A DNA stretch of 64,000 nucleotides, taken from positions 186,001 through 250,000 of the forward strand of contig NW_013657632.1 of NCBI RefSeq assembly GCF_000142905.1. The letters run 5' to 3'. The notes beneath the pieces are model-generated. The model saw only the letters and a list, made by a program, of their open reading frames with translations, did not search any database and was not told the origin of the DNA. The DNA comes from Thecamonas trahens ATCC 50062 (taxonomy: Eukaryota > Protista > Apusomonadida). Below, piece by piece: positions 2,462-31,700 of this stretch. Position 1 is the first letter of the stretch; every line of letters starts with the position of its first letter. The position numbers were made by a program, and so were the translations under genes.

Positions 2462-5182
2462 TCATGCAAACGCGCGGTCCATCTTCTCCGCAACCGTCTC
2501 GGGCATATACTTGAGGTACTTGTACAAGTTCTTGGTAAACGAGACGTCACGATACCGCGCCACAAACTGAGTGTACAGCGGGAGCAATCGCTCCTTTGAT
2601 TCGGCCTTGAGCGCGTCGCGGAGCTCCGGATCCGCCACCGTGTACGTTGCCGCGGCCGCTGTGATGGCCTCAAACTCGGCGTTGAACTTGGAGAACCGGC
2701 TCTTGATGTTTTCGCGGTCAGACTTGGACAGCTTGGCCGACTCGCCTCCCGATGCCTTCAGCGCAAGGTTCTTGTCGAGCAAATGCGTCATGGCCGCATC
2801 CCACGTCCGCTGGTACTTTTCGCGGGCCCGCGCCTCCTGAGCCTCAAACTCGCCCACCAGCGCGCCCGGGACGACCGAGGCGAGGCCCGACGACCGGACC
2901 GAGCTCACGATGTAGTGAAAGTTGTTGAGGAGAAAGATGTGCCGCAGCGAGTCGACCTTGTAGCTCCTCGCCTTGGCGTGGATGTTATCCTCGAGCGTGC
3001 GGAGGACCTTGCACATGTACTCGCCCAGCGGCGTTGTCGCTGCCCGCGCTTCGCCGCTGCCGCTCGCCTCGCCCGCCTCGCGCCACGACACCGCTGGCAG
3101 CCGCGATTGCAGCAGCGCCTCGTAGTCGAGCAGCGCCCGGGCGTAGCCGAGCGTGTTGGCGGTGTGCTCCGAGACGGTTCCATCCTTGGGAACTTGCTTG
3201 GCAGAGTGCGATGCCACCGAGGCCACAAACGACGTCAGCCACGCCCGCAATGCTCCGTTGAGCGAGTCCATAAATTTGGAGAGGCCAGTGGCAAGACCGA
3301 TGCCATCGACGCCGCGCAGCACGCTCGCAAACGCCACAAAAGTCTCTGACAGCACGCCGACCACGTCCATCGTCACCAGCGGCCGCATAGACTCCTCACT
3401 CCGCGCCACTGCCCCGCTCCCGACCTCAACGAGGTAGTCCACCGAGGCCTCGACCACGGTCTTAAAGTTGGCATCAAACGAGTCGAGCGTAAAGAGCCGC
3501 GTCGCAAACTCGCGCTCGGCCTCGGCCATCCCGAGAAAGCTCTGCACCAGCTTCAGGTACGGCAGCGAGCCCTTGGTGTACCAGTGGACGTGGGGTCCAG
3601 TCTCGGCCGACCGCGCCCGGCGCCGCCCGCTCCGTCGCCTGCTCCCACTCTTCGCCGGTGCGTCCGCTCCGAGCGCCACAGCCTCGGCCTTGAGCGACGC
3701 CATCAGGCCGGTTCGCCTCGCGCTCGCCAGCACTGCCTCATGCGCGGTGTACCGCGCTCCGCTCAGCGCCGGCGCCACATCGAGGAGCAGGCTTGCGGCA
3801 TCTGACGCCACCGGCCACGCCCCCTCGACTCCGACGTACTCGGCCGCAAGGCGCGCCTTGGCGCACGACGTCGTCGCTACCCGCGCCACCATCTCGCCTA
3901 CATTCTCCAAGCCCTTGGCCCGCATGGTCCGCAGTGTCGCCGCCGTCGCCTTAGCATCGGCATACTCGGGGTGCGCTCCAAAGAACGCCAGCGCCGCGTC
4001 GATCCGCTCCACAGCCCGGACCACCGGCTTGTACCGTTCCTGTCGGGCAGGCTGCGAGACAACCTGGGCCAGCTCACCAGGCACCGCGTAGTGCGCCAGC
4101 GCCTCCTCCAGCAACTCTGTCGTCGCCTCGAGATTGGCGTGCGTCGTTTGCAGCTGGGAGGTGACCGTGTGGATGGGGACGACCAGCGACTCGACCACGT
4201 CGAGCTTGGCCTCGACCGCCTCTAGTCCGCTCCGCAGGTTGCCTGCGGCATCCTTGGCCCGTCCTAGCGCGTCGCGGAACGACGTGAGCATCGCCGAGTC
4301 GCGCGCCACCGCTGCCTCCAGCTCGGCGAGCGCCGCCTCCTGCGCTGCCATGTGGTCCGGCATCGGCGTCCCCGGCACCGTCGCGTACAGCTCTTCCTGC
4401 AGCAACTTGTCTGTCAGAGAAAGCTCTTGCTTCACCTGGCCCTGCGCCAGAGCCAGCCAAGCATCCGACTTGAGCTCGTGGTCGAGCGCAGACGCAAATA
4501 TCGATGACCGCTGCCGCGCCCCGCCTGTCAACTGCGCCCGCCGCCGCTCGCGCCGCTTGCGCCGGGCTCGCGCTGCTTCGGCAGAGCTGCCGAGTCTCTC
4601 GCCCTCGTCAGTCCATGATCTCGAGCCCGAGTACGAGTAATCGACCGTGTACGACTCGCTCCCGCTGTCAGCCTCGCCGATGCTCTCGTCCTCCCGCCCG
4701 CGGTCGGCCTGGATCTTGCTAGCCGATCGATTGAGGACTCGTGCAGCCTGCGAGAGCTTTGGATGCGACCGCAGAATGTCCCAGCCGTGCTTCCGCGGCG
4801 TCCGCGGTGTCGCCTGTCCCCCATCGCCAGACTCGCGAGGCGCCGCTTGCGCCCGAGCTGGCGTTGGTGTAGGGGCTGGTGGTGCACGCGCTGGTGCTGG
4901 TGCTCGAGCTCGGGCCGCTGACCGAGCGGCCGGGACAGGTGCCTCGCTTCCACTCTCGCTTTCCGAGCTGCTTCCACATGAGAACGAGCTGCTGTCTGAA
5001 CCAGCGGTAGCTCGCGTCTGCGCTCGGTCCGGCGGGCGAGCCGGAACTGCAGGCGCCGGTCTTGCCGCTGACGCCGCCGAGGAGGGCGGCAGCGGAGGGA
5101 CGGCCGGCGGCGGGCCGCTGCTGGCGCTAGAGCCGCTCTGAGACGAGGTGGAAAAGTCCAACGAGGTCGATGACGACGCCAT
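2462..5182 (-). CDS. EXOC7: Exocyst subunit Exo70
   Basis: VPKDGTVSEHTANTL, IFLLNNFHYI, DRENIKSRFSKFNAEFE, VADPELRDAL, FTKNLYKYLKY are typical Exo70 C-terminal motifs. Likely start MASSSTS at 5182, with a low-complexity N-terminus. Confidence 0.93.
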   Translation of the reverse strand: MASSSTSLDFSTSSQSGSSASSGPPPAVPPLPPSSAASAARPAPAVPARPPDRAQTRATAGSDSSSFSCGSSSESESGSEAPVPAARSAARARAPAPARAPPAPTPTPARAQAAPRESGDGGQATPRTPRKHGWDILRSHPKLSQAARVLNRSASKIQADRGREDESIGEADSGSESYTVDYSYSGSRSWTDEGERLGSSAEAARARRKRRERRRAQLTGGARQRSSIFASALDHELKSDAWLALAQGQVKQELSLTDKLLQEELYATVPGTPMPDHMAAQEAALAELEAAVARDSAMLTSFRDALGRAKDAAGNLRSGLEAVEAKLDVVESLVVPIHTVTSQLQTTHANLEATTELLEEALAHYAVPGELAQVVSQPARQERYKPVVRAVERIDAALAFFGAHPEYADAKATAATLRTMRAKGLENVGEMVARVATTSCAKARLAAEYVGVEGAWPVASDAASLLLDVAPALSGARYTAHEAVLASARRTGLMASLKAEAVALGADAPAKSGSRRRSGRRRARSAETGPHVHWYTKGSLPYLKLVQSFLGMAEAEREFATRLFTLDSFDANFKTVVEASVDYLVEVGSGAVARSEESMRPLVTMDVVGVLSETFVAFASVLRGVDGIGLATGLSKFMDSLNGALRAWLTSFVASVASHSAKQVPKDGTVSEHTANTLGYARALLDYEALLQSRLPAVSWREAGEASGSGEARAATTPLGEYMCKVLRTLEDNIHAKARSYKVDSLRHIFLLNNFHYIVSSVRSSGLASVVPGALVGEFEAQEARAREKYQRTWDAAMTHLLDKNLALKASGGESAKLSKSDRENIKSRFSKFNAEFEAITAAAATYTVADPELRDALKAESKERLLPLYTQFVARYRDVSFTKNLYKYLKYMPETVAEKMDRAFA

Positions 5183-20692: not shown

Positions 20693-23600
20693 ATGGACGT
20701 CATTCGCGGACGGTCACAGGTGGCCGAGGCCGTGGTGGCCTGCTTCCATGGACAGCTTCTATTCAAGGATCTGTCGGTGGAGCTGCGCAGAGCAAAGCCT
20801 CTGTTCATGAACCCGCTACACTTTCCTGTACGCAGTCTGGTGTGGTGAGGGGGAGGAGGGAGGGGGAGGCCGATGGGTGGGTGACGCTGCGGTGCGGGCG
20901 CGCCAGAAAAAGCCCATCCATGACTGGCGGCTCTCCGCCGGAGAAGGTGCGGCAGGGCGTGGCGCAGAAGAGGGCATGCTGGGCAGAGAGGGGCTCACGG
21001 TGTGCTGTACATGTATGTGGATGTGTGCGGGTGGTGCGTGGGGCGTGGGAGGGAGTAGGAGCGGTCGGCGGATGACGCCAAGAAGGTCAGCGAGGCCGAG
21101 ACGACGCCGCTGAACATCTACGGTAACGAGAGCAAGCGGTCGGCGACGTTCATCAAGCGGGTCAACGAGCTTGCTGAGGACCTCAATCTCAACCATATTG
21201 TAGCTGCGGCGTTTGTGCAGGAGGCACAGCGCAAGCTTCCGGGCTATGAGGGCCCGCTGGGCGAGGACGAGCCGGACCTCGAGGTCCCGCGGCTGGCCAA
21301 GCAGCTGTACTTTGAGGAGCGGCGCGCTCTGCTGCTCGCGCTTCTTGAGCTGGTCAAGGGCCGGATGGACGACTCCTATCGACGGTGCCAGGATACGCGA
21401 CAGCGCCAGGAGGGTCAACGGCGCCAGGCGGGCATTGTGGCGTTTACCGACGAGTTGCTGACGGTCCACGATGTGGCCAGCAAGCTGGCCAAGCTCGTGA
21501 CGCGGGCCAACCGGGTTCTCACCACCGACGCCGAGCTCAACAAGTACGGCCCTGACGGGCGGGTGTACTTTATCGACGAGCGGCAGCACTTGGCGCTCAC
21601 GCTCTTCTACATCTACTACCAGGGCTACCGCGAGCCCAAGACGGTGCGCGAGCTGATGACAGTGTTCAAGGAGACGGCCAAGCTTGCACGGTCAGACGAC
21701 GCCGACGACCCCACGTTCCAGGTGGCGGTCCTGCTTGCGCTTGCGCTGGTGGCGGCGCTCGATCCGACGAGTCGGGATATGGAAACGGGCGGGCCATCGA
21801 TGGCGTCGCCAAGCCAGCGTACCAACTCGCTGCTGGCCGACGAAGCGTTTGGCAAGAACATGCGCGAGTTGCTCGGCACCGCGTCATCGTGGGAGGCGCA
21901 CACCAAGGGACTCCGGGCCTTGGTCCTCCTCGCGTTTTCGCTCTTTGTCACCGATGCCAAGTGGGCGGACCACGCGGCGCAGTTCAGCGCGGCGGTTGCC
22001 GACAATGTCTTTGAGTTTGCGCGGACGCGCATCCTCGCGTCCAAGCTCTTCCTCGAGGCCTCGCGCGACACGCCGTTCTTTGTCTCCAAGCTCGACGAGC
22101 TCATGATGTGCTTCCTCAAGTCGAAGCCGTCGCAAGTGACTCAGCTCAAGCAGGAGGACGAGCAGGCGACGCGGCGCGAGATGACGACGGGCGGGCAGGG
22201 CGGTGAAACGCGGCACGACTTTGAGCAGCTCCTCTTCTTCCTCACGGCTCTGTACTCCAAGTGGCCGGGAGCGCTGCGTTTCTGGACTGACCGGCCGGAC
22301 GTGCTGACGTCGGCGAGCATGAACGTGACGATCCGGCTTCACGTGGCGTACCTCGACTTTCTGGCGGCGCTGGCCAACACACCGGAGGCGGCCGAGCAGG
22401 CGTACTACTTTCTGGACTCGCCGCCCAACGCGTCAGTCGGGTGGGCGCACTTTTTCGAGGTCATCAAGAACTACGAGGCCGAGCTGCGACGCGATGACGC
22501 GCGGTCACACTCTGCGCTCGCGCCGCGGGTGGCGCGCGAGCTGCACCACGACGACGTCATGGGCCTCTGCGCCATTCTCCGGCTCATGGAGACGGTGCTG
22601 ACCCACTACGCCGAGGCGCGCATGGCCATGGAGTCGTCGCGGCACTGGGCCGGCCTCCAGTCGCTCTTTGGCCTCCTCGCTTGCCAGGTGCCTGCCGTGC
22701 TCAAGGCACACCTGCTGCGGGTCATTGCCGCCTTTGCGCGCTCGCCCGAGCTCTGCGCGCGTGTTTGGCAGCTTGTCGAGCAGGCTGGCCTGCTCCCGAT
22801 CCCGCGCGACGGGAACCCGAACGCATTCATGGCGGCTCTCGAGGGCAAGCCATCGGCAGACGTGGTCCTCATTCCGCGCGGCGGTGGGCGCGAGTACGGA
22901 ACCGGGGTGATGGGCCACGAGGCGAGCATGGCGGCGAGCCGGGCGCTGGTGGCAGGCGGCCCGCCTCTCGCCGGCATTGTCTTTGACCTCGAGGAGATCG
23001 AGGCCCGGGACGAGGCTTATCCAGAGACGCTGGCGTTTCTCCTCCTGCTCACCAACCTCATCCGCAGCGGCGTTCCGCAGCGGCTTGGGTTTGGCATGCG
23101 CGACCCGGGCTTCCTCCCGTACTTTAACTTTGTGGCTGGCCATGTGTGGCTCAAGTTTGACACACGCGGCTACGCGTTTACAGGGCAAAAGTGGGAGGTG
23201 GCGCGGGCGGCGCTCATTGTCTTTGACCGGCTGCTGAGCCAGTACGTGCCGGTCGAGTCGGACTTTCTGGACGACGCGACACTTGCTGCACAGCCGGAAG
23301 AAGTGTCCAAGCTCCGCACGCCAGGCTTTGCGCTGATGTCGGCCATGCTCTCTGGCGGACCGTTCTACCGCAAGCTTGTCTCTGTCCTCGAGGTCGGCGT
23401 GGACGCGCTTGAGGGCGACCGGTTCAAGGCCGGCGGCGAGGCGCTCGAGGCGTGCATTCTCCTCTGCCTTCGCATTATCAACCGGACCTTTGAGCTCGAG
23501 CCGGTCTTTCTCAAGTTTCTGCGGTCGGCGACGGTGTTGCCGTCTGCGGTGCGGCTCGACCAGTCGCTGCGGCAGAGCAAGAAGGTGCTCGGGGCGATTG

Positions 23601-26600
23601 CCAACTATGTGTCGTACCGCCACTGCGCGGAGCTCGTCTACAACGCGGTCAAGGTGCTGCAGTCGCTCTCGGCGACGGGCGTGCCGCTCGTCCCGGTCCT
23701 CTCCTCGCTCAACATGGCGGACGAGGTTGCGCTCAAGCTTGTGGGGCGGCTGGAGGACGGGACGCCGGAGATTTTGGAGCCTGAGTTGCTCCACCCGCTC
23801 CTCTCGGTGCCTCCACTGGCGTCGCTGGCGCTCAACGACCCGTTCTTCCTCCTCACGCCCGACGTCGAGGGCGCGGTGGTCGACGTCGAGGCGCTTGTCT
23901 CGTCGGGCCTGCTCTCTGCAGACATTGTGGCTGAGTACTACGTCAACCGGACGCGCGAGGCGGTGCTCGAGCTGCTCCTTGTCTCGCTCAATGCGCCGTA
24001 TCCGTCGATGACTCATCTGCTCTGTGGGTTCGAGCTCGAGCGCGGGCTTGCGGCGTCGCGGCTGGTCTCGATCGCGCACAACTGCCTCAACATCCTGCTC
24101 CAGCTGGCGGCCGACCCTGAGTTTGTGGTCTACTTTCCGACGCTTGCCGAGGGTACGGCGCGTCTGGTGCATGCGCTTGTCTCGACGCCTGCGACGTCGA
24201 CGGCGACGCTGCAACTGCTGCGATCGCGCGATGTGGACTACTTTGAGGGCGCGTACGCGGTGCTGAGGACTGCCTACACCATTGAGCCTGAGCTGCCGGA
24301 CGTGTCGGCCGGGCCGGTGCTCCGTCTGCGGTACACGTCGTGGATTCTGAAGTCGATTGCACTCGAGCTGCATGTGGCTGGCGGGCCGAACACGGTCCAC
24401 CGGCCGCAGGCAGTGCGGCTGCTGACGGCGCTGTACTCGAGCTCGGAGCCGCGGCAGCGAGGCGAGCCTGGTGCGCTGCCGTCGTTTTGGGACGCTGCTG
24501 CGAGCGCCCACGGCGAGGCGTCGGGAGTGGAGCAGGCTCGGATGAAGCTCCTCGAGGTACTGTACTCACTGCAGGAGGTGGACGAGGTCGAGCCGCCGTT
24601 CCCGAGCATTCCGCTGGACGAGGGCCTTGTGGCGACCACGATTTCGAAGAACGCAGCGGGCGTAGAGTGCTTTGACGTGCCGGCGCTGTACCGGGTGCTC
24701 ATGGCTGCGCCGCACCTACGGGCGGGCATGATGCCTGGGACCGGGATGAGCGAGATGGGCGTGGGCGACGAGAGCTCGGACGCGGCGTCGGTGGTGCACC
24801 AGCTGGTGGCGGCGGCGGCCGACTGGAACGGGTACCATGAGCGCTTCATGGCGCGGGTCGAGGTCATGACAGCGTGGTCGCAGATTGTGCTCGCCACGCT
24901 TGCGCGGTGCTACGAGCTACTTGGCTCCGAGTCACGCGAGTCGATCCTGTTCATGGTCCTCGACTCGCTGCTGTTCCTCCTCGGGCGCGGGGTGAGCGCC
25001 AAGGCTGTGGCGCGGTCGATGACCTCTGTCGTCCTCGCCATCCTGTCCAAGCTCCTGCAGGTGCAGGTCTCGTCGCGGCAGACGACACACGTGCCGGTCA
25101 ACCACCTTCACGCGCTGCTCCGCGGGATTCTTGCGGCGCTGCTGCGCCACGGGTCCGACCAAGTCCAGCGCGGCAACCTGTACGCAGCGCTGATGGCGTA
25201 CCTGCAGCTGACGCAGCCGGACGTGACGCTGAGCGCCAAGCACCTCGGCGAGGACGCGGGAAGCTCGCTCAACGAGTCGGCGTGGGGCGAGCCCGAGTCG
25301 CGGGCGCCAGCCGAGGCGCTGGCCAGCCGGCGGTCAGCGATTGCAAGCGGAAACGCTAAGATTGTGGCCGCCGCGGGCGAGGCGCTACTCGACGTGCTCT
25401 GCCGCGACGCGTCGCACGGCAAGCAAGTGTGGCAGGCGCTCGCCTTTAGCGCGCTCAACGTCCTGGTTGCCGCCGTCGGCTCGGGCTCGCTGCTGCAGTA
25501 CATGAAGACGCACGGATACCTGCGTGTCTTCCTCGACGACCTTGACAAGCAGGACTCGCTGCTCTCGTCTGTCCTCACGTCGTCGGCGACTGGAACCGGG
25601 GTCGAGCTCGGGAGTGCGGCAGCGCTCCGTGCGCTGCACGTGTACGAGGCCAAGATGGCGCTGCTGCTGCGGCTGGCCGGGACGCACAACGGGGCGCGGG
25701 CACTCATTGAGAGCGGCCTCGTCCACAGCCTCATCTCGTGCCACTTTGTGGACTACCGGCCCGAGCCGTCGGTGCTGGACACGCTTGCGCCTGTGGTGGT
25801 AGAGACGTACCACTCGCTGCTCATGCCTGTGCTCCAGCTCCTCACGGCGCTGCTGAGCTCGCTTGGATCTGCGGCACTCGACCAAGTTGTCGCGTTTCTC
25901 TCTGCGCACGCCCAGCTCGTCCTGCTGGTACTCAAGGACCGGGCGCCGACGGTCCGCAAGGAGTCGCTGGCCGAGGTGCGTATGATGACCGCGTTGTTCT
26001 ACGCGCTGGCTCGGGTCAACAAGGCCAAGCGGCTGGAGGCACTGCTGCCGGAGTTTGGGTGGCAGTTTCACGGCCACCTCCTCGCGCTCCTCGCCAAGTA
26101 CTCGGTCGCGGCGCGGTGGGAGACCAAGTTGCACCCGTCGACGATCCTTGAGGCTGCCGCACGGTCGATCCGGGTCATCTGCCGCAACGTCATCGGCTAC
26201 TGCACGGTGGTCTCGTCGCCAGCGGCGGGCGACGAGCTCCCGCTCACGGCCTCGGGCCTGCTCTTCTCGCCCGAGCTCAGCGGGGCGCTGATGGGCGCGA
26301 CGGCGGCCGAGCCGGTTGAAGTGCCGCTGGCCATCCAGACCCGCGCGCGCTCGCCACCGCTCGCCACCCTCGTCATCTACGTCTCGTCGTGCGCCCTCGA
26401 GCTGCAGACCACGTTTACCCAACTCGACCTGCTCGAGCGCAGGGCCGGGTCGATGGCCGAAATGGAGGCTGCCGAGGAAGAGGCTGCCCAGGCACTCGTC
26501 GAGTCGATGCGTCTCAAGAGAGAGGACATTGCCACCCTCTGGTTCTCGCTGGAGAACACGCTACTTGTTCTCCTCCGGCACCTGCAGTGGTACTTTGAGC

Positions 26601-26908
26601 TGTTTGTGCCCGGCGGCGCAGCCTCATCCTCGACCTCGCTGGGCAACGGCGCTGCCGGCGACGCAGACTCGCTCACCGTCAAGGAGCTGGCCCAGCTCGC
26701 GTCGGACGCCTCGGCCTGCATCACGCCGGTCCTCGACTCGCTCCGCAAGCTGGACTCGGCCTCGGGCTCGGCCAGCGAGTTTGTGCAGTTCCTTGTCCGC
26801 CGCCTCCGTGAGATGCTCCGCGTCGGCGTGGACCGTCACGGCTCGGCGCTTGCCCGCGAGGAGGTCTTTTCGCACCGCCGCCGGCAGGAAGCCTACCCGA
26901 TGATGTAA
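20693..26908 (+). CDS. NUP205: Nucleoporin Nup205/Nup192, 2 exons (20693-20827, 21059-26908)
   Basis: About 1994 aa helical solenoid with YFEERRALL, LEEIEARDEAYPETLAFL, KWEVA, PGF, QRGNLYAAL, YEAKMALLLRLA. Phase-0 intron GTACGC...GGCTCAC...TAG joins NPLHFP|ERSADD. Confidence 0.9.
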
Positions 26909-26973
26909 AGTACTGATGCGCAGTGCGGGGGAGTATCGGGGTGGGAGCAGGGGGAGATTTTGTTTTATCGTAG

Positions 26974-27262
26974 CTACAATCAAGCGCAAGGAACGAGCAA
27001 ACAGCGTGAGTGGGTGATGAGGAGGAAAGAACGAGAGGAAGGGCATGGCATGGGCATGGCAATCCCCTCAGGGTTAAAAAGCTCTTGTTGTTTCACCACG
27101 AGTGGCGGTCCTACCCGCCGTAAGCGTCGGATTTGTGATCATCATTAGGAGGTCGCATGCCTGCGAAGCGAGCAGCGGCGGGGCGTGTCGGGGCGACAAC
27201 GCGCAGCGCGCAGCTCGGGGAGAGAAAAAGAGAGGGAGAGGGGATCGGGCAGAGTCGCGTAC
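26974..27262 (-). other. Predicted RPL32 3'UTR intron hosting a snoRNA
   Basis: Donor GTACGC 45 nt after the stop, pyrimidine tract, ACTCAC branch, TTGTAG acceptor. Confidence 0.75.
27063..27152 (-). ncRNA. Box C/D snoRNA copy A (U36/snR47-like SSU guide)
   Basis: C box ATGATGA (27145-27139), D box CTGA (27071-27068), short terminal stem. D guide GAGCTTTTTAAC is complementary to the conserved 18S GUUAAAAAGCUC; C' GTGGTGA. Confidence 0.88.
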
Positions 27263-27307
27263 CACATGACGGTTGCACAGTTGCCTGGCTGGTCGTACTT
27301 CTTGGGT

Positions 27308-28149
27308 TTACTCGTCCTCCTCCTGGCGAAGGCGGGCATGAGCATTGGTGAGCTTGATGTCGAGCTGCTGGGCGCTGTGGCAATCAGAGGAAGGGGGCAG
27401 AGAGGTGAGTGAAGGTCGTGGGGAGAGAGAGCAGATGCTGTGCCAGGGAGGCAATGCGATCCCCTCAGGGTTAAAAAGCTCTTGTTGTTTCACCACGAGT
27501 GGCGGTCCTACCCGCCGTAAGCGTCGGATTTGTGATCATCATTAGGAGGTCGCATGCCTGCGAGACCAGAAGCGCGACGTCGAGAGGGCGACGACGGACA
27601 GCTGGGAAAATAAAACGGGGGAAAGATGGGCAAGGGGAGAGAGAGGGAGGGAGGGCAAGGAAGGAGGAACATACCGCTTGACGATGGCACGGCGCTTGCG
27701 GGCCGAGACGCTCTTGCAGATCTCGCCGGCAAACTTGCGGTGCTGCATCAGGAGCACATCAAGGTCAGCGACGTTGCGGACGTTGAAGCGGTAGAAGCCG
27801 TTCGGGTCGCGGTTGCGGGTCACCTTGTCTGTGCCGTAGCCAATGTTAGGCATGGGGAGGGCGCCACGGAAGCGACGACGGACGCGGCCATCGATACCCT
27901 TCGGCTTGCGCCACGACGGCTGTGGGGGGGAGGGAGGTAGACGACGAGGGTGCGGTGAGTGGGTGGGTGGGTGTAGGGGGGGGGGGAAGGGAGGGGGGAG
28001 TAAAAATCAAACACGACCAAGACAGAGGGACATACCTTGACGGAGTAGCGACCGTTGGACGGGCCGAAGACGATACCGGACTGGTGGCGGGTGAACTTCT
28101 TCGACCGCTTGACGACCTTCTTCTTCTGGTAGGGGAGAGCCTTCACCAT
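27308..28149 (-). CDS. RPL32: 60S ribosomal protein eL32, 3 coding exons (28149-28036, 27919-27675, 27374-27308), 141 aa
   Basis: KKFTRHQS...[24 protein letters not shown]...[25 protein letters not shown]. Both introns are GTATGT...ACTCAC...CAG. Confidence 0.96.
27460..27549 (-). ncRNA. Box C/D snoRNA copy B in RPL32 coding intron 27674-27375
   Basis: Within a 105-bp exact duplicate (27459-27563 = 27062-27166). Its 3' end is about 85 nt upstream of the acceptor, typical of intronic C/D snoRNAs. Confidence 0.9.
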
Positions 28150-28154
28150 GTTAA

Positions 28155-28638
28155 CTGTATGCGGTGGTAGGGGAGGGGGGAACAGATTGGGTTGAGTGAG
28201 TGATCGCCAATGGTCTTTGGGCATCCGAGACACACAATGTGCGAGAATGGAGAGGCATCGAACAGATGGCATAGAAATAGATAGACAAAGGCAGTCAAGG
28301 CCATGCTGGTGTGCTCCATGTTCGTGCGACGGGAAGAGGCTGTATCCCGGTCGTGTAGACGTGGACGGGCGTGTGCGAGGGGAAGGAAGGGTGGGCAGAG
28401 TGGGCGCAAACAAAAACAGAGGCTGATGCCCAGACGGTGTAGACGAGGTAGAGGCCAAGGGGCATGGGGCTAGCCACAGCACCGGCAACAACAACAGATG
28501 GCTTGCAGCTGACCCATTTCCATGGACGCATGCGTAGGTAGTGTGGGGGAGGTGGGGGGAGAAGGAGGAGGATGCAAGGGGAAGGAGGGGAGGGAGGGCA
28601 TGCGGTATGGCAAAGCGCAAGGCGTTCGGAGGACGTAC
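28155..28638 (-). other. Predicted RPL32 5'UTR intron
   Basis: GTACGT donor after a pyrimidine-rich leader, ACTCAC branch, and ATACAG acceptor 5 nt before the ATG. Confidence 0.7.
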
Positions 28639-28793
28639 CAATTGAGGCGAGTGGTTGCACTGGAGAGTGAAAAACAGAGTGTGGCCATTTGCGCGAGCTC
28701 AACTCGGATCGACTGCGAAAACCATTCCGCTCGTCTCGGCACGTTTCGCCGACAGCCCGAAAAAAGGCTACTTTTCCGTTCACGTGCCGCACC

Positions 28794-31700
28794 ATGTTCC
28801 GCACGCGTGACTCATGGCCATGCTACAGGCGAGCTCTCTTTGGCCTTGTAGGCCTCGTTTTGCTGACCAGCTCGAGCAGAGTGCTGGTAGAGGCTGCTAC
28901 ACTAGAGTCTGCTGATGTAGCCTGCCCGGGATTTACTGGGCAGGCCCTTGCCTCGCCGTATGGCATGGGAAAGAGCGAGCAGTCCTCCATTGCGCTAAAG
29001 GACTACCGCGCGGCGACAAGCTGCAAGCCGTTTTTACCCACCTCGACGATCTTTGTGGATCCAAGCACCATGTTCCGGATCGGCCAACTGAGTGCTGCGG
29101 CTAGTAGCGGGGACATTGTCACTCGGGTGGCCAACGTGAGCAAGGTCGAGCTCGAAGCCGCGTTTTCGGACAGTCCCTGGACAGCAGATGGCGCGCTCAA
29201 CGACATTGCCTACGCGCCGGGCACATTCGCAGCCTCCATGGACGGAAGCGACGTCTCGTTGTTTACTCTCGGTACCGGCGCAGCATTTGCGGCGACTCTG
29301 ACGGACGTCATCAACGAGCCCAGCTTTGCCGATGGGTTTGTTTTCGAGACTTCGTCGCTTGCGTGCGGCTTGGCAGGCTCGGCGTGCACGTTGTCAGCGA
29401 ACGACGGCGTTGGACGGAACACTGTTCTACAGCTCCGATATTACAAAGTCTGCACGCCGTTCAACTATGCGGGTGGCTCCGCGACGCCGCATACCATCAC
29501 AGGCGACAACAGCGCGCCGCGCGGCGACTCGCTCGCGCTCAACTGCGACGGCGGTGATACGCTGTTTGGCGCGCCGGGAGGCGTGACGACATGCACGGCG
29601 AGCCTTGAGTGGGATCCTCCGGCCGCCAGCGTGCGGTGCGGCCCGCCACCGTCGCCACCACCACCCCCATCGCCGCCGCCGCCTCCATCGCCGCCGCCGC
29701 CACCGCCCTCGCCGCCGCCCCCATCACCGCCGCCATCGCCGCCGCCCTCGCCGCCGCCATCGCCGCCGCCGCCTTCTCCGCCGCCGCCGTACGCCTGTAA
29801 CTTGCTGTCTGCCCCGACCAACGGGACGATTTCATTTAGCAATGCAGGGTATGCTGGATCGCTGGCAACGATTTCGTGCGACACTGGCCTCGATTTGGTC
29901 GAGGGGTCGGCGAACAGGAGCTGTGTGGGGCCGATGTGGGACGGGCTCGGTCCAGCCGTGTGCCGGTTTGTGGCCTGCCCGCCGCTTATCGCGCCAACGG
30001 CAGGCAATGTGGCATGCGACGGCGGATCGAGCTTGTCGAGTCCGGCTGCGTTTGGCGAGACCTGCAGCTACTGGTGCAATGCTGGCTACTCGCTGGTGGG
30101 GGGCGCCTCCCGCGTTTGCCTCGGCGACTCGACGTGGAGTACGGGCCAAATAGCGTTTTGCTCATCTTTCAACATCACAACGTCGTACGCGGTCGTGCCT
30201 GGCAGCAGCAGCGGGCAGATGGTCCGCGAGGTTGGGTCTGTCGTGGCGTACAAAGTCTACGTCCGCGATGAGTTCTCCAACCCAACAGGGACCGGGGCCG
30301 ACGAGCCGTACGCGCGAATGACAGCGCCGAGCGCGAACGGCGCCAACCTGGCGGCGGCGACGTATGTGACGGTCGGCGAGTACGATGTGGCGCTAACGGT
30401 GCCAACGATAACAGGCAACTACGTGTTTGAGCTTGGGCTCAACGACATGGCATTTGTGGTTGCGCCATGGACGCTGGCAGTCACGGCGGAAGCCGGCCCG
30501 GTGTGGGGCCCAGCGTGCGCTCTGGTCGGCCTCCCAAACTCGGGTGTGCTCGAGGTGGAGACTGGGTCGGAGACGCGATTCAATGTTGAGCTGTGGGATG
30601 CGTACGGTAATAGCCTGGCGGCGGCACCGGACACGGGTGCGATCGCGGTCCAGGTTCGGCAGGGAGTGACGGTCATAGCGTCGGCGGTGCAGGTCATCTC
30701 GCTGGATGCGGCGTGGCTGGTGTTTGACGTCAAGGTGCCGGACGGCGGAACGTACACGCTGCTGGTTGAAATAGATGGGCGCGCCATTCCGGGCGCGCCT
30801 TTTGTGATGAACGCGGCTACGACGTGCGAGCCTGGCACAAAGGTGCTCGACGGGGTCAAGTGCGCTGCATGCGGAGTTGGGACGTACTCGGACAGCGTCA
30901 ACGCGGTTGTGTGCCCAACGTGTCCAGGCTTTACCACCTCCCAAGAGGGCTCGACATCGTTCCTCAACTGCACTTGCTTGCCCACGTTCTGGTTTGGAGA
31001 GGGGAAGCGCAGGGCTGACAAACCATGTGTGCCGTGCCCAGCTGGTGCAATCTGCGACGGTGGCGTCACGCCGCCGCGGGCGGCGCCCGGTTTTGAGCCG
31101 ACTGACGACGGAAGCGCATTTGTGGCGTGTCCGCGACCGACGGCGTGCGCTGGCGGCGGGCATTGTGCGGCCGGGTACGCCGGTCGGCTGTGCGCGCGGT
31201 GTGCATCCGGATACTATCGGCTCAACAACGAGTGCCGCAAGTGCAAAGGCTCAAACGTAGTGGTTATTATCGCGCTGGTATTGCTTGTCTTTGGATACGT
31301 GGCGGGCGTAGTGTGGATCAACACGCGGAACACCAAGGTGTACGGGTACGCGGCGTTTGTTATTGCACTCAACACGCTGCAGGCTGTTGCGCTGTACGGC
31401 ACGATCCAGCTCGAGTGGCATCCGGTCGCTGACGCCATATTTGATGCCGTCTCGCTGGTTAATCTCAACCTGGATCTGGCGGCGCCCGAGTGCGGGCTCG
31501 ACGTCGGCGACGTGTGGATGTTCAAGTGGGGCATGACCATGGCAATGCCGGTTCTCTTCCTCCTGCCGTTTGGCATGGTGATTGTTGTGGGGAGCGCGGT
31601 GACCAACGCGCACCACAACCGCGAGGTGGCCGACGGCAAGGCCGACGGCAAGCGGGCACTGCTGCGCCCGAGTCCGGCGCTGATCGGCGCGGGCGGGCGC

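What the first reader, a model, noticed from the sequence alone, without database searches (positions are those of the whole stretch)
26974..27674. RPL32 carries two identical snoRNAs, one in a 3'UTR intron placed just inside the NMD-safe distance
Seen: a 105-bp exact duplicate occurs in coding intron 27674-27375 and again downstream of the stop. The downstream copy is flanked by a GTACGC donor (45 nt after TAA), an ACTCAC branch and a TAG acceptor. Both copies end about 85-90 nt before the acceptor, and their flanks are weakly similar. Known: 3'UTR introns are rare, and junctions more than 50-55 nt past a stop trigger EJC-dependent NMD. Inference: a snoRNA-bearing intron was duplicated into the 3'UTR, doubling snoRNA output per RPL32 transcript while avoiding NMD. 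Exact identity with diverged flanks suggests selection or gene conversion.
Basis: partly seen in the sequence, partly recalled or inferred. Interest (0 to 1): 0.85.

Follow-up and report, generated by a model that had tools for sequence, protein, structure and literature searches.

The report
Duplicated snoRNA in RPL32 3'UTR intron
The ribosomal protein gene RPL32 of the marine protist Thecamonas trahens carries two identical copies of a small rRNA-methylation guide RNA, one in a coding intron and one in an intron just after the stop codon that RNA data show is spliced; this is an unusual layout of an ordinary kind of gene, and the proposed link to mRNA-decay avoidance is untested.

Summary
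RPL32 (minus strand; Thecamonas trahens ATCC 50062) holds a 105-nt exact duplicate at 27563-27459 and 27166-27062. These are the only two copies in the 28.7-Mb assembly.

Each copy is a canonical box C/D snoRNA. Its D guide pairs 13 nt with 18S rRNA at the conserved Am619(yeast)/Am668(human) site, so it is U36/snR47-like. The best Rfam match is SNORD36, at 22.4 bits, below the curated threshold of 30.

The downstream copy lies in a real 3'UTR intron (27262-26974, GT..AG). RNA contigs from two studies join 27263 to 26973, and a third is compatible. The last exon appears to be only about 21-22 nt long.

Origin by local duplication with later homogenisation is plausible but unproven: the flanks are no more alike than their composition predicts.

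The "NMD-safe placement" reading is not supported as design, for three reasons:
- The mature 3'UTR is only about 67 nt, so most possible positions fall under 50 nt.
I checked it: predicted snoRNA-bearing introns lie 70 and 127 nt past the stop, though their splicing is unverified.
- Vertebrate stop-proximal 3'UTR introns can still trigger NMD.

Verdict: a real feature, a new member of a known kind, of moderate interest.

The parts
28036..28149 (-). RPL32 (eL32) coding exon 1, ATG at 28149-28147, 38 codons
   Evidence: Its translation equals residues 1-38 of P0001. RNA contigs join 28036 to 27919.
27920..28035 (-). Intron 1 (116 nt, GTATGT..CAG)
   Evidence: Skipped in RNA contigs of X1, X2 and X11 (table 5).
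27675..27919 (-). Coding exon 2 (245 nt)
   Evidence: Its translation equals residues 39-119 of P0001.
27375..27674 (-). Coding intron 2 (300 nt, GTATGT..CAG), host of snoRNA copy 1. The branch-like CACTCAC is at 27411-27405.
   Evidence: Skipped in RNA contigs of X1, X2 and X11. Motif position.
27459..27547 (-). snoRNA copy 1 (about 89 nt), identical to copy 2. The exact repeat core extends to 27563.
   Evidence: 105-nt exact match. Same boxes and guides as copy 2.
27263..27374 (-). Exon 3: the last 22 codons, TAA at 27310-27308, then 45 nt of 3'UTR
   Evidence: Translation equals residues 121-141 of P0001. RNA contigs cover 27374-27258.
26974..27262 (-). 3'UTR intron (289 nt, GTACGC..TAG), host of snoRNA copy 2. 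The branch-like CACTCAC is at 27012-27006.
   Evidence: Contigs X1 rec3 and X11 rec6 leave the genome at 27258 with one mismatch, then continue with letters that map uniquely to 26968-26952. This gives a junction 27263^26973.
27062..27150 (-). snoRNA copy 2 (89 nt). C box AUGAUGA 27145-27139; D' CUUA 27124-27121; C' UGGUGA about 27098-27093; D guide 27084-27072; D box CUGA 27071-27068; terminal stem CCUCC/GGGG. The exact repeat core extends to 27166.
   Evidence: Sequence read directly. Fold shows the terminal stem and an internal hairpin. Full-length sub-threshold SNORD36 alignment. 13-nt Watson-Crick match to SSU rRNA.
26952..26973 (-). Terminal 3'UTR exon, about 21-22 nt, containing AUAAAA
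   Evidence: The X1 contig runs into an Illumina adapter after 26953, and the X11 contig ends at 26952. Contig ends are only suggestive of an RNA end.
28155..28156 (-). Probable acceptor (AG) of a 5'UTR intron. A CACTCAC motif lies about 40 nt upstream of it.
   Evidence: The mRNA contig X1 rec3 begins exactly here. Sequence. The donor was not located.

Best explanation
RPL32 of Thecamonas trahens is the only host in this genome of a U36/snR47-type box C/D snoRNA, and it holds two identical copies. One copy lies in coding intron 2. The other lies in a constitutively spliced intron that begins 45 nt after the stop codon.

Shown: both introns are removed from the mRNA; the two copies are identical; both have canonical boxes; and both carry a 13-nt guide that places the first A of the 18S GGUUAAAAAGCUC stretch at the fifth position upstream of the D box.

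Inferred:
- Each pre-mRNA yields two snoRNAs, released from the excised and debranched introns by exonucleolytic trimming up to the snoRNP. Both copies sit 59-61 nt upstream of a CACTCAC branch-like motif, which is compatible with splicing-coupled assembly.
- The snoRNA directs 2'-O-methylation of SSU A630, the site homologous to yeast Am619 and human Am668. A weaker D' guide (D' box CUUA) may direct methylation of LSU G3173.
- The second unit arose by local duplication of the snoRNA or of the whole intron. The cores were then kept identical, or made identical again, by gene conversion or by recent copying.
- The mRNA ends about 21 nt after the last splice site, so 3'-end formation follows a very short terminal exon.

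The 45-nt distance from the stop is most simply a consequence of a very short 3'UTR, not a device to avoid NMD.
For: Identity and copy number:
- The duplicate is exact over 105 nt.
- Only two copies exist in the genome.
- The organism and protein are identified by a 100% match to T. trahens eL32, P0001.

Splicing:
- All three introns are absent from RNA contigs, while the exons are covered.
- Two independent studies (X1 seawater metatranscriptome, X11 organism-level transcriptome) show the 27263^26973 junction.
- A third study (X2) is compatible with it.
- The letters beyond the junction map uniquely to 26952-26968.

snoRNA features:
- The boxes, terminal stem and internal hairpin are present.
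- The D guide matches 13 nt of the SSU copy on contig C81.
- The D' guide matches 12 nt of LSU 3166-3177.
- SNORD36 is the best Rfam family, aligned over its full length at 22.4 bits, E 0.13.
- The Am619/Am668/Am621/Am612 site and its guides snR47/U36/AtU36/CD25 are documented in PMC3511168 and PMC8817022.

Same pattern elsewhere in this genome:
- At RPS14, a 113-nt exact snoRNA duplicate sits in two predicted introns downstream of the stop, again with diverged flanks and with two LSU guides.
- An environmental DNA contig confirms that locus.
Against: - No small-RNA or read-level data were available, so accumulation of an RNA of about 89 nt and methylation of the target are not shown.
- The Rfam score is below SNORD36's gathering threshold.
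- The full rDNA copy on contig C44 has four A's, not five, in the target stretch. That would leave 8+4 paired bases with a bulge. The copy on C81 has five, so this is probably a homopolymer error.
- The D' box is non-canonical (CUUA).
- Flank similarity is not statistically significant, so whole-intron duplication is not demonstrated.
- The RNA 3' end rests on contig ends, which the tool warns cannot prove an end.
- The extended external stems are no better than shuffles.
Confidence: 0.8

Rival explanations
1. The 3'UTR intron was positioned, or is retained, at under 50-55 nt from the stop by selection, so that the exon-junction complex is removed by the terminating ribosome and the highly expressed RPL32 mRNA escapes NMD.
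For: - The junction is 45 nt after the TAA.
- The spliced form is the only form seen in three RNA data sets, so it is not grossly unstable.
- UPF1 is present at 176.7 bits and UPF3 at 33.6 bits; UPF2 is a weak match at 24.9 bits.
- A 3'UTR intron more than 50 nt from the stop is the strongest NMD predictor in human cells (PMC5238794).
Against: - The mature 3'UTR is only about 67 nt, and the convergent Nup192 gene leaves no room. A junction under 50 nt is therefore expected without selection.
- RPS14 in the same genome has predicted snoRNA introns 70 and 127 nt past the stop.
- In vertebrates, stop-proximal 3'UTR introns are common, and those 36-50 nt from the stop are the most UPF1-sensitive (PMC7310861).
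- Mago was not detected, although that search is uninformative.
- EJC-dependent NMD is untested in apusomonads.
Confidence: 0.12
2. Only the snoRNA segment of about 105-125 nt was copied recently, by ectopic conversion or insertion, into a 3'UTR intron that already existed. On this view no whole intron was duplicated, and the shared layout of the two introns reflects processing constraints (a fixed distance to the branch point), not common descent.
For: - The flanks are no more alike than shuffles or than intron 1.
- Identity has sharp borders.
- Both copies sit 59-61 nt from the branch-like motif, which functional constraint could explain.
- RPS14 shows the same pattern of an exact core with unrelated flanks.
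Against: - 12 of the 17 exonic nt just 5' of the two donors match in register. Apart from intron 2's own donor, only 2 of 246 GTAYG sites in the window reach this, one being the UTR donor. That hints the copied segment reached into exon 2.
- No poly(A) tract or target-site duplication marks a retroposed copy.
Confidence: 0.35
3. The downstream copy is an assembly artefact or a non-functional relic: either a collapsed or mis-joined repeat, or a copy that is spliced out but never matures into a snoRNP.
For: - No small-RNA data were available.
- RNA contigs do not cover either snoRNA.
- The donor GTACGC differs from the GTATGT of the other introns.
Against: - The flanks are distinct, and RNA contigs confirm the exon junctions on both sides of each copy.
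- X19 unitigs cross both borders of the downstream copy.
- The sequence is identical to copy 1 over the boxes, guides and stem, so any processing competence is shared.
- A relic would have diverged as its flanks have.
Confidence: 0.04

Closest known systems
SNORD36 (U36A/B/C) of vertebrates, snR47 of yeast, AtU36 of Arabidopsis, CD25 of Dictyostelium
   Same: - It is a box C/D snoRNA whose D guide targets the same universally conserved 18S adenosine (Am668/Am619/Am621/Am612; PMC3511168, PMC8817022).
- SNORD36 is the best Rfam hit and aligns over its full length.
- It is intronic in a ribosomal protein gene and present as several copies in successive introns of one host. From my own knowledge, human U36A-C lie in RPL7A.
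   Different: - The CM score is below the curated threshold (22.4 against 30 bits).
- The host is RPL32, not RPL7A.
- None of 80 distant RPL32 loci from metagenomes carries this guide.
- The second guide pairs with LSU 3166-3177, upstream of the A loop, and uses a CUUA D' box. It does not target the U36/snR47 LSU site (Am3703/Am2218).
- One copy lies beyond the stop codon.
snoRNA host genes whose snoRNA-bearing introns lie downstream of the termination codon (GAS5/UHG-type hosts and NMD-targeted protein-coding hosts in human cells)
   Same: snoRNAs are released from introns that follow a stop codon. In those cases tandem snoRNA-intron units are separated by short non-coding exons, as predicted here for RPS14.
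   Different: - In those cases the spliced host RNA is typically an NMD substrate and often non-coding (PMC5238794).
- Here the host is an abundant ribosomal protein mRNA. The single RPL32 junction is 45 nt from the stop and the terminal exon is only about 21 nt.
- NMD sensitivity here is unknown.
[quoted passage not shown] 2020, PMC7310861)
   Same: There is a single 3'UTR intron less than 50 nt after the stop.
   Different: - No snoRNA cargo is mentioned in that paper (the word occurs 0 times in its text).
- Those introns were studied as regulatory NMD features in animals, not in a protist ribosomal protein gene.

Membership tests
Box C/D snoRNA | C box RUGAUGA near the 5' end and D box CUGA near the 3' end | tested here: met
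   AUGAUGA at 27145-27139 and CUGA at 27071-27068 in copy 2, identical in copy 1.
Box C/D snoRNA | Short terminal stem that brings the C and D boxes together | tested here: met
   CCUCC/GGGG(A) pairs in the minimum-free-energy and centroid folds. The longer external stems are no better than shuffles.
Box C/D snoRNA | Guide of 10 nt or more complementary to rRNA, with the target nucleotide paired to the fifth position upstream of D or D' | tested here: met
   The D guide GAGCUUUUUAACC pairs 13 nt with GGUUAAAAAGCUC of the SSU copy on C81, and the fifth position pairs with the first A. The C44 copy has one A fewer. The D' guide pairs 12 nt with LSU 3166-3177, but the D' box is only CUUA.
Box C/D snoRNA | Accumulates as a stable RNA of about 70-100 nt bound by fibrillarin/Nop56/Nop58/Snu13, and the target is 2'-O-methylated | not testable with these tools
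   No small-RNA reads or RiboMeth-seq were available, and the single read-laying run gave contigs only.
SNORD36 / snR47 (Rfam RF00049, RF01203, clan CL00051) | Score at or above the family's curated gathering threshold | tested here: not met
   SNORD36 scores 22.4 bits against a gathering score of 30, E 0.13, when 151 nt are searched. There was no hit at E<=1 when 3 kb were searched. snR47 and snoU36a did not appear.
SNORD36 / snR47 (Rfam RF00049, RF01203, clan CL00051) | Guides methylation of the 18S A668/A619-equivalent adenosine | tested here: met
   Guide register as above. The homology of the site rests on the universally conserved GUUAAAAAGCUCGUAG stretch and on the published tables (PMC3511168, PMC8817022). 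That the target is the first A of the run is taken from my own knowledge.
SNORD36 / snR47 (Rfam RF00049, RF01203, clan CL00051) | Second guide to the LSU A3703/A2218-equivalent site | tested here: not met
   The best LSU complementarity of the D' region is at 3166-3177, 28-39 nt upstream of the A-loop U. That is a different site.
3'UTR intron | GT..AG intron lying wholly downstream of the authentic stop codon and removed from the mature mRNA | tested here: met
   The stop is verified against P0001. The junction 27263^26973 appears in RNA contigs X1 and X11, and X2 is compatible.
NMD-immune (stop-proximal) 3'UTR intron under the 50-55 nt rule | Junction less than 50-55 nt from the stop, and mRNA insensitive to UPF1/EJC loss in an organism with EJC-dependent NMD | tested here: inconclusive
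   The distance of 45 nt meets the arithmetic. UPF1 and UPF3 are present, UPF2 is weak and Mago was not found. No functional data exist. The RPS14 counter-example is predicted only.

The most novel reading that the evidence does not exclude
Thecamonas (perhaps apusomonads generally) habitually lengthens ribosomal-protein genes at their 3' ends with snoRNA-bearing introns made by local duplication. It keeps the snoRNA cores identical by gene conversion. It ends the mRNA on micro-exons of about 20 nt, so that mRNA 3'-end formation depends on splicing of a snoRNA intron. If so, either EJC-triggered NMD is weak or absent in this lineage, or decay of the spliced host (as predicted for RPS14, with junctions at 70 and 127 nt) is used to balance snoRNA output against ribosomal-protein output.
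Probability: 0.25. Interest if true: 0.55.

Novelty: new member of a known kind. Interest (0 to 1): 0.4.

Why it matters
- It gives an RNA-supported example, in a deep-branching relative of animals and fungi, of a ribosomal protein mRNA whose 3'UTR carries a spliced snoRNA intron followed by an exon of only about 21 nt.
- It shows that the sole genomic source of a LECA-age rRNA methylation guide can be two identical copies in one pre-mRNA.
- Together with RPS14, it offers a small natural test bed for two questions. Does the vertebrate 50-nt NMD rule hold outside animals? How are tandem intronic snoRNA copies kept identical?
- It does not by itself change what is known about snoRNA biogenesis or NMD.

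Tried and rejected
- Rfam over 3 kb at E<=1 gave only a chance sR53 hit on the other strand. A targeted search gave a sub-threshold SNORD36 match.
- Flank homology: local alignments scored against 1000 dinucleotide shuffles and against intron 1 were not significant. There was also no similarity after the two acceptors. Simple tandem duplication of a unit that includes exon 3 is therefore not supported.
- Extended external stems flanking each copy were no better than shuffles (p 0.17-0.25).
- The whole snoRNA fold has a z-score of -0.04, as expected for C/D snoRNAs, so it is uninformative.
- Relatives: the nearest eL32 in 5.8 billion proteins is 70% identical, and the best metagenome locus is 67%. 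No related RPL32 locus could be compared, and none of the 80 distant loci has the guide. Locus L032 comes from a human-gut metagenome and could be host-derived. It was not inspected or used beyond that automatic count.
- RNA evidence for RPS14: the only contig encoding the exact product is unspliced environmental DNA.
- A Mago_nashi six-frame search found nothing, but also nothing in the controls, so it is uninformative.
- Paper searches for T. trahens with snoRNA, NMD or EJC terms found nothing relevant. Other searches found no paper that describes a snoRNA-bearing 3'UTR intron in a ribosomal protein gene.
- The bacterial-type promoter and terminator scan was irrelevant and empty.
- The joined spliced CDS was never searched. 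Exon 2 was searched alone by reference, and the exons were compared one at a time with P0001.
Full report
**What is there.**
Read on the minus strand, window 28149-26952 is the eL32 (RPL32) gene.
- The start codon is at 28149.
- Exon 1 is 28149-28036.
- Intron 1 is 28035-27920 (116 nt).
- Exon 2 is 27919-27675.
- Intron 2 is 27674-27375 (300 nt).
- Exon 3 starts at 27374.
- The TAA stop is at 27310-27308.

Each exon, translated on its own, is found in order in the public 141-residue protein "ribosomal protein L32 [Thecamonas trahens ATCC 50062]" (P0001). Pfam places that protein in Ribosomal_L32e. The organism is therefore the apusomonad T. trahens, as earlier notes of this scan also said. I did not search the joined spliced CDS. 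Only exon 2 was searched, by reference.

**The repeat.**
The longest exact match between the two introns is 105 nt, at 27563-27459 and 27166-27062. The repeat finder reports 125 nt at 94%. A search of the whole 28.7-Mb assembly finds only these two copies. The guide-plus-D-box pattern GCTTTTTAAC..CTGA also occurs only twice in the genome, and never in shuffles of the window.

**It is a box C/D snoRNA of the U36/snR47 type.**
Each copy has the following features:
- a C box AUGAUGA;
- a 14-nt spacer;
- a degenerate D' box (CUUA);
- a GGCGG/CCGCC internal hairpin;
- a C'-like UGGUGA;
- a second guide;
- a D box CUGA;
- a CCUCC/GGGG terminal stem.

The D guide GAGCUUUUUAACC is complementary to GGUUAAAAAGCUC of 18S rRNA. 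The fifth position upstream of the D box pairs with the first A of that stretch. In the numbering of the assembled SSU this is A630.

The complete rDNA copy on contig C44 shows only four A's at this place. A second copy on C81 shows the universal five, which gives 13 uninterrupted Watson-Crick pairs. I take the four-A version for a homopolymer error or a variant repeat.

This adenosine is the site methylated as Am619 in yeast (guide snR47), Am668 in human (U36), Am621 in Arabidopsis (AtU36) and Am612 in Dictyostelium (CD25). It has been traced to the last eukaryotic common ancestor (PMC3511168, PMC8817022).

When only 151 nt are searched, the best Rfam family is SNORD36. It aligns end to end at 22.4 bits, below the gathering score of 30, and its D' box aligns to the CUUA here.

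The D' guide pairs perfectly over 12 nt with LSU 3166-3177, 28-39 nt upstream of the A-loop U. That predicts Gm3173. This is not the second target of U36/snR47. With a CUUA box I hold this prediction with less confidence.

**The 3'UTR intron is real.**
I laid four runs on 26000-29000. RNA contigs of X1 (seawater metatranscriptome), X2 (subsurface metatranscriptome) and X11 (a single-organism transcriptome) cover the exons, skip both coding introns exactly, and have no depth inside any intron.

At the 3' side, the X1 and X11 contigs align down to 27258 with one mismatch. They then carry loose letters whose reverse complement is ATAAAACAAAATCTCC(C).

That string occurs once in the window, at 26968-26952 on the minus strand, five bases after the predicted acceptor. 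The five intervening bases of the mRNA (CTACG) resemble the first bases of the intron (GTACG). This explains both the overhang of the alignment and its single mismatch. The junction is therefore 27263^26973, and the intron is 27262-26974 (289 nt, GT..AG).

The X2 contig ends inside those five bases with the same single mismatch, so it is compatible with the junction.

X1 and X2 also differ from the assembly at 26509 (G>A). They therefore come from natural populations, not from the sequenced strain.

**The end of the mRNA.**
The X1 contig passes directly from ...ATCTCC (26953) into Illumina adapter sequence. The X11 contig stops at 26952. Two independent libraries stopping within one base of each other suggests an RNA 3' end there. 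That would give a terminal exon of 21-22 nt containing AUAAAA, and a mature 3'UTR of about 67 nt. Contig ends cannot prove an RNA end, so this stays an inference.

The space is tight. The convergent gene, a Nup192/Nup205 nucleoporin (ORF 21215-26908, plus strand), has its stop only about 44 nt from this point. Its transcripts reach at least 26920.

**How it probably works.**
Both copies sit in the same position within their introns. The D box ends 59 nt (intron 2) and 61 nt (UTR intron) upstream of the A of a CACTCAC branch-like motif. That motif lies 31-33 nt from the acceptor, and it recurs in intron 1 and upstream of the probable 5'UTR acceptor.

From established knowledge of intronic C/D snoRNAs, snoRNP assembly is coupled to splicing, and a position some tens of nucleotides upstream of the branch point is favourable. 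After debranching, exonucleases trim the intron to the snoRNP. I infer that each RPL32 pre-mRNA delivers two molecules of the same guide. Because no other copy exists in the genome, RPL32 transcription is the only source of the guide for this conserved 18S methylation.

**Origin of the duplicate.**
Local alignments of the 5' flanks and of the 3' flanks score within the range of dinucleotide shuffles, and are no better than either flank against intron 1. The sequences after the two acceptors are unrelated. That argues against a simple tandem duplication that included exon 3.

Two small signals remain:
- Identity decays gradually over about 10 nt beside the core.
- In register with the donors, 12 of the last 17 exonic nucleotides agree. 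Apart from intron 2's own donor (a 17/17 self-match), only 2 of 246 GTAYG sites in the window reach 12/17, and one of them is the UTR donor.

This hints that the copied piece reached from the end of exon 2 through the intron. A recent copy of the snoRNA segment alone into an existing 3'UTR intron is not excluded. In either case, an exact 105-nt core with flanks at chance level means recent copying or gene conversion, not slow divergence under selection alone.

**A second case, and what it does to the NMD idea.**
An earlier first-reader note (s1-748593) pointed to RPS14. I located that gene and read it.
- After the canonical ...GGRRGRRL stop there are 70 nt, then a GTATGT donor.
- An intron follows, holding a double-guide C/D snoRNA. 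Its two guides pair with LSU 2865-2878 and 2842-2852.
- That intron ends with a CACTCAC motif and an AG acceptor.
- Next comes a 57-nt exon, then a second GTATGT intron with a 113-nt exact copy of the same snoRNA and unrelated flanks.

An environmental DNA contig (JGI 3300005399) reproduces the locus up to the second copy. I could not test splicing there.

If those introns are spliced, the junctions lie 70 and 127 nt past the stop. That is well outside any "safe" distance, in a gene expressed as highly as RPL32.

- With a 3'UTR of about 67 nt, most positions are under 50 nt anyway.
- In vertebrates, stop-proximal 3'UTR introns are commoner than distal ones, and those 36 nt or more from the stop are the most stabilised by UPF1 knock-down (PMC7310861). 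So 45 nt is not clearly safe even where the rule was defined.
- The rule's machinery is only partly visible here. UPF1 scores 176.7 bits and UPF3 33.6 bits, and UPF2 is weak at 24.9 bits. Mago was not found in a six-frame search that may fail on split genes.

That snoRNA hosts are often NMD substrates is known for human cells (PMC5238794).

**Comparison and novelty.**
The RNA is a new, divergent member of the U36/snR47 functional group. It fails the curated SNORD36 score and lacks that family's second target, so I describe it as U36-like by target rather than as a family member.

Several copies of one snoRNA in successive introns of a ribosomal protein gene, snoRNA mobility between hosts, and snoRNAs in UTR introns are all established. 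PMC3511168 explicitly sets UTR-located intronic snoRNAs aside in its analysis.

The particular features here are:
- the host (RPL32);
- the RNA-supported 3'UTR position in a ribosomal protein mRNA;
- the very short terminal exon;
- the recurrence of the pattern at RPS14.

No relative close enough for a locus comparison exists in the collections searched. The best eL32 matches are 70% and 67% identical, and none of 80 distant RPL32 loci carries this guide.

**Verdict.**
It is a new member of a known kind, of moderate interest.

Noticed in passing
L011 (G000:C38:341041-344397), minus strand, 1488-862: RPS14 is followed by two predicted GTATGT..AG introns. The first donor is 70 nt after the stop, and a 57-nt exon separates the introns. 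Each intron holds a 113-nt exact copy of a double-guide C/D snoRNA whose guides pair with LSU 2865-2878 and 2842-2852. An environmental DNA contig (L012) confirms the locus. Splicing is not verified.
   Followed up: partly
window 28155-28483 (minus strand): The RPL32 mRNA contig starts exactly at an AG (28156-28155) that is preceded by a CACTCAC motif, so a 5'UTR intron is likely. Run X1 also has RNA contigs over 28206-28483, at depth similar to the mRNA.
   Followed up: no
L003/L006 (G000:C44) against L007 (G000:C81), SSU rRNA position about 630: The complete rDNA copy has GGTTAAAAGCTC (four A's), whereas the partial copy on C81 has the universal five. This is a likely homopolymer error in the assembly or a variant repeat, and it changes the apparent snoRNA pairing.
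   Followed up: partly
window 21215-26908 (+): A 1897-residue open frame matches Nup192/Nup205 (486.8 bits). It is convergent with RPL32, and the two mRNA 3' ends lie within about 30-45 nt of each other or overlap.
   Followed up: partly
window 28054-28077 (minus strand): eL32 of T. trahens has about 8 extra residues (…[17 protein letters not shown]…) in a normally conserved N-terminal stretch. The stretch is present in the public protein and covered by RNA contigs.
   Followed up: no
window 26509: RNA contigs of the seawater run (X1) and the subsurface run (X2) both read A where the assembly has G, inside the Nup192 gene. This is a natural variant, which shows that T. trahens-like cells occur in those environments.
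   Followed up: no
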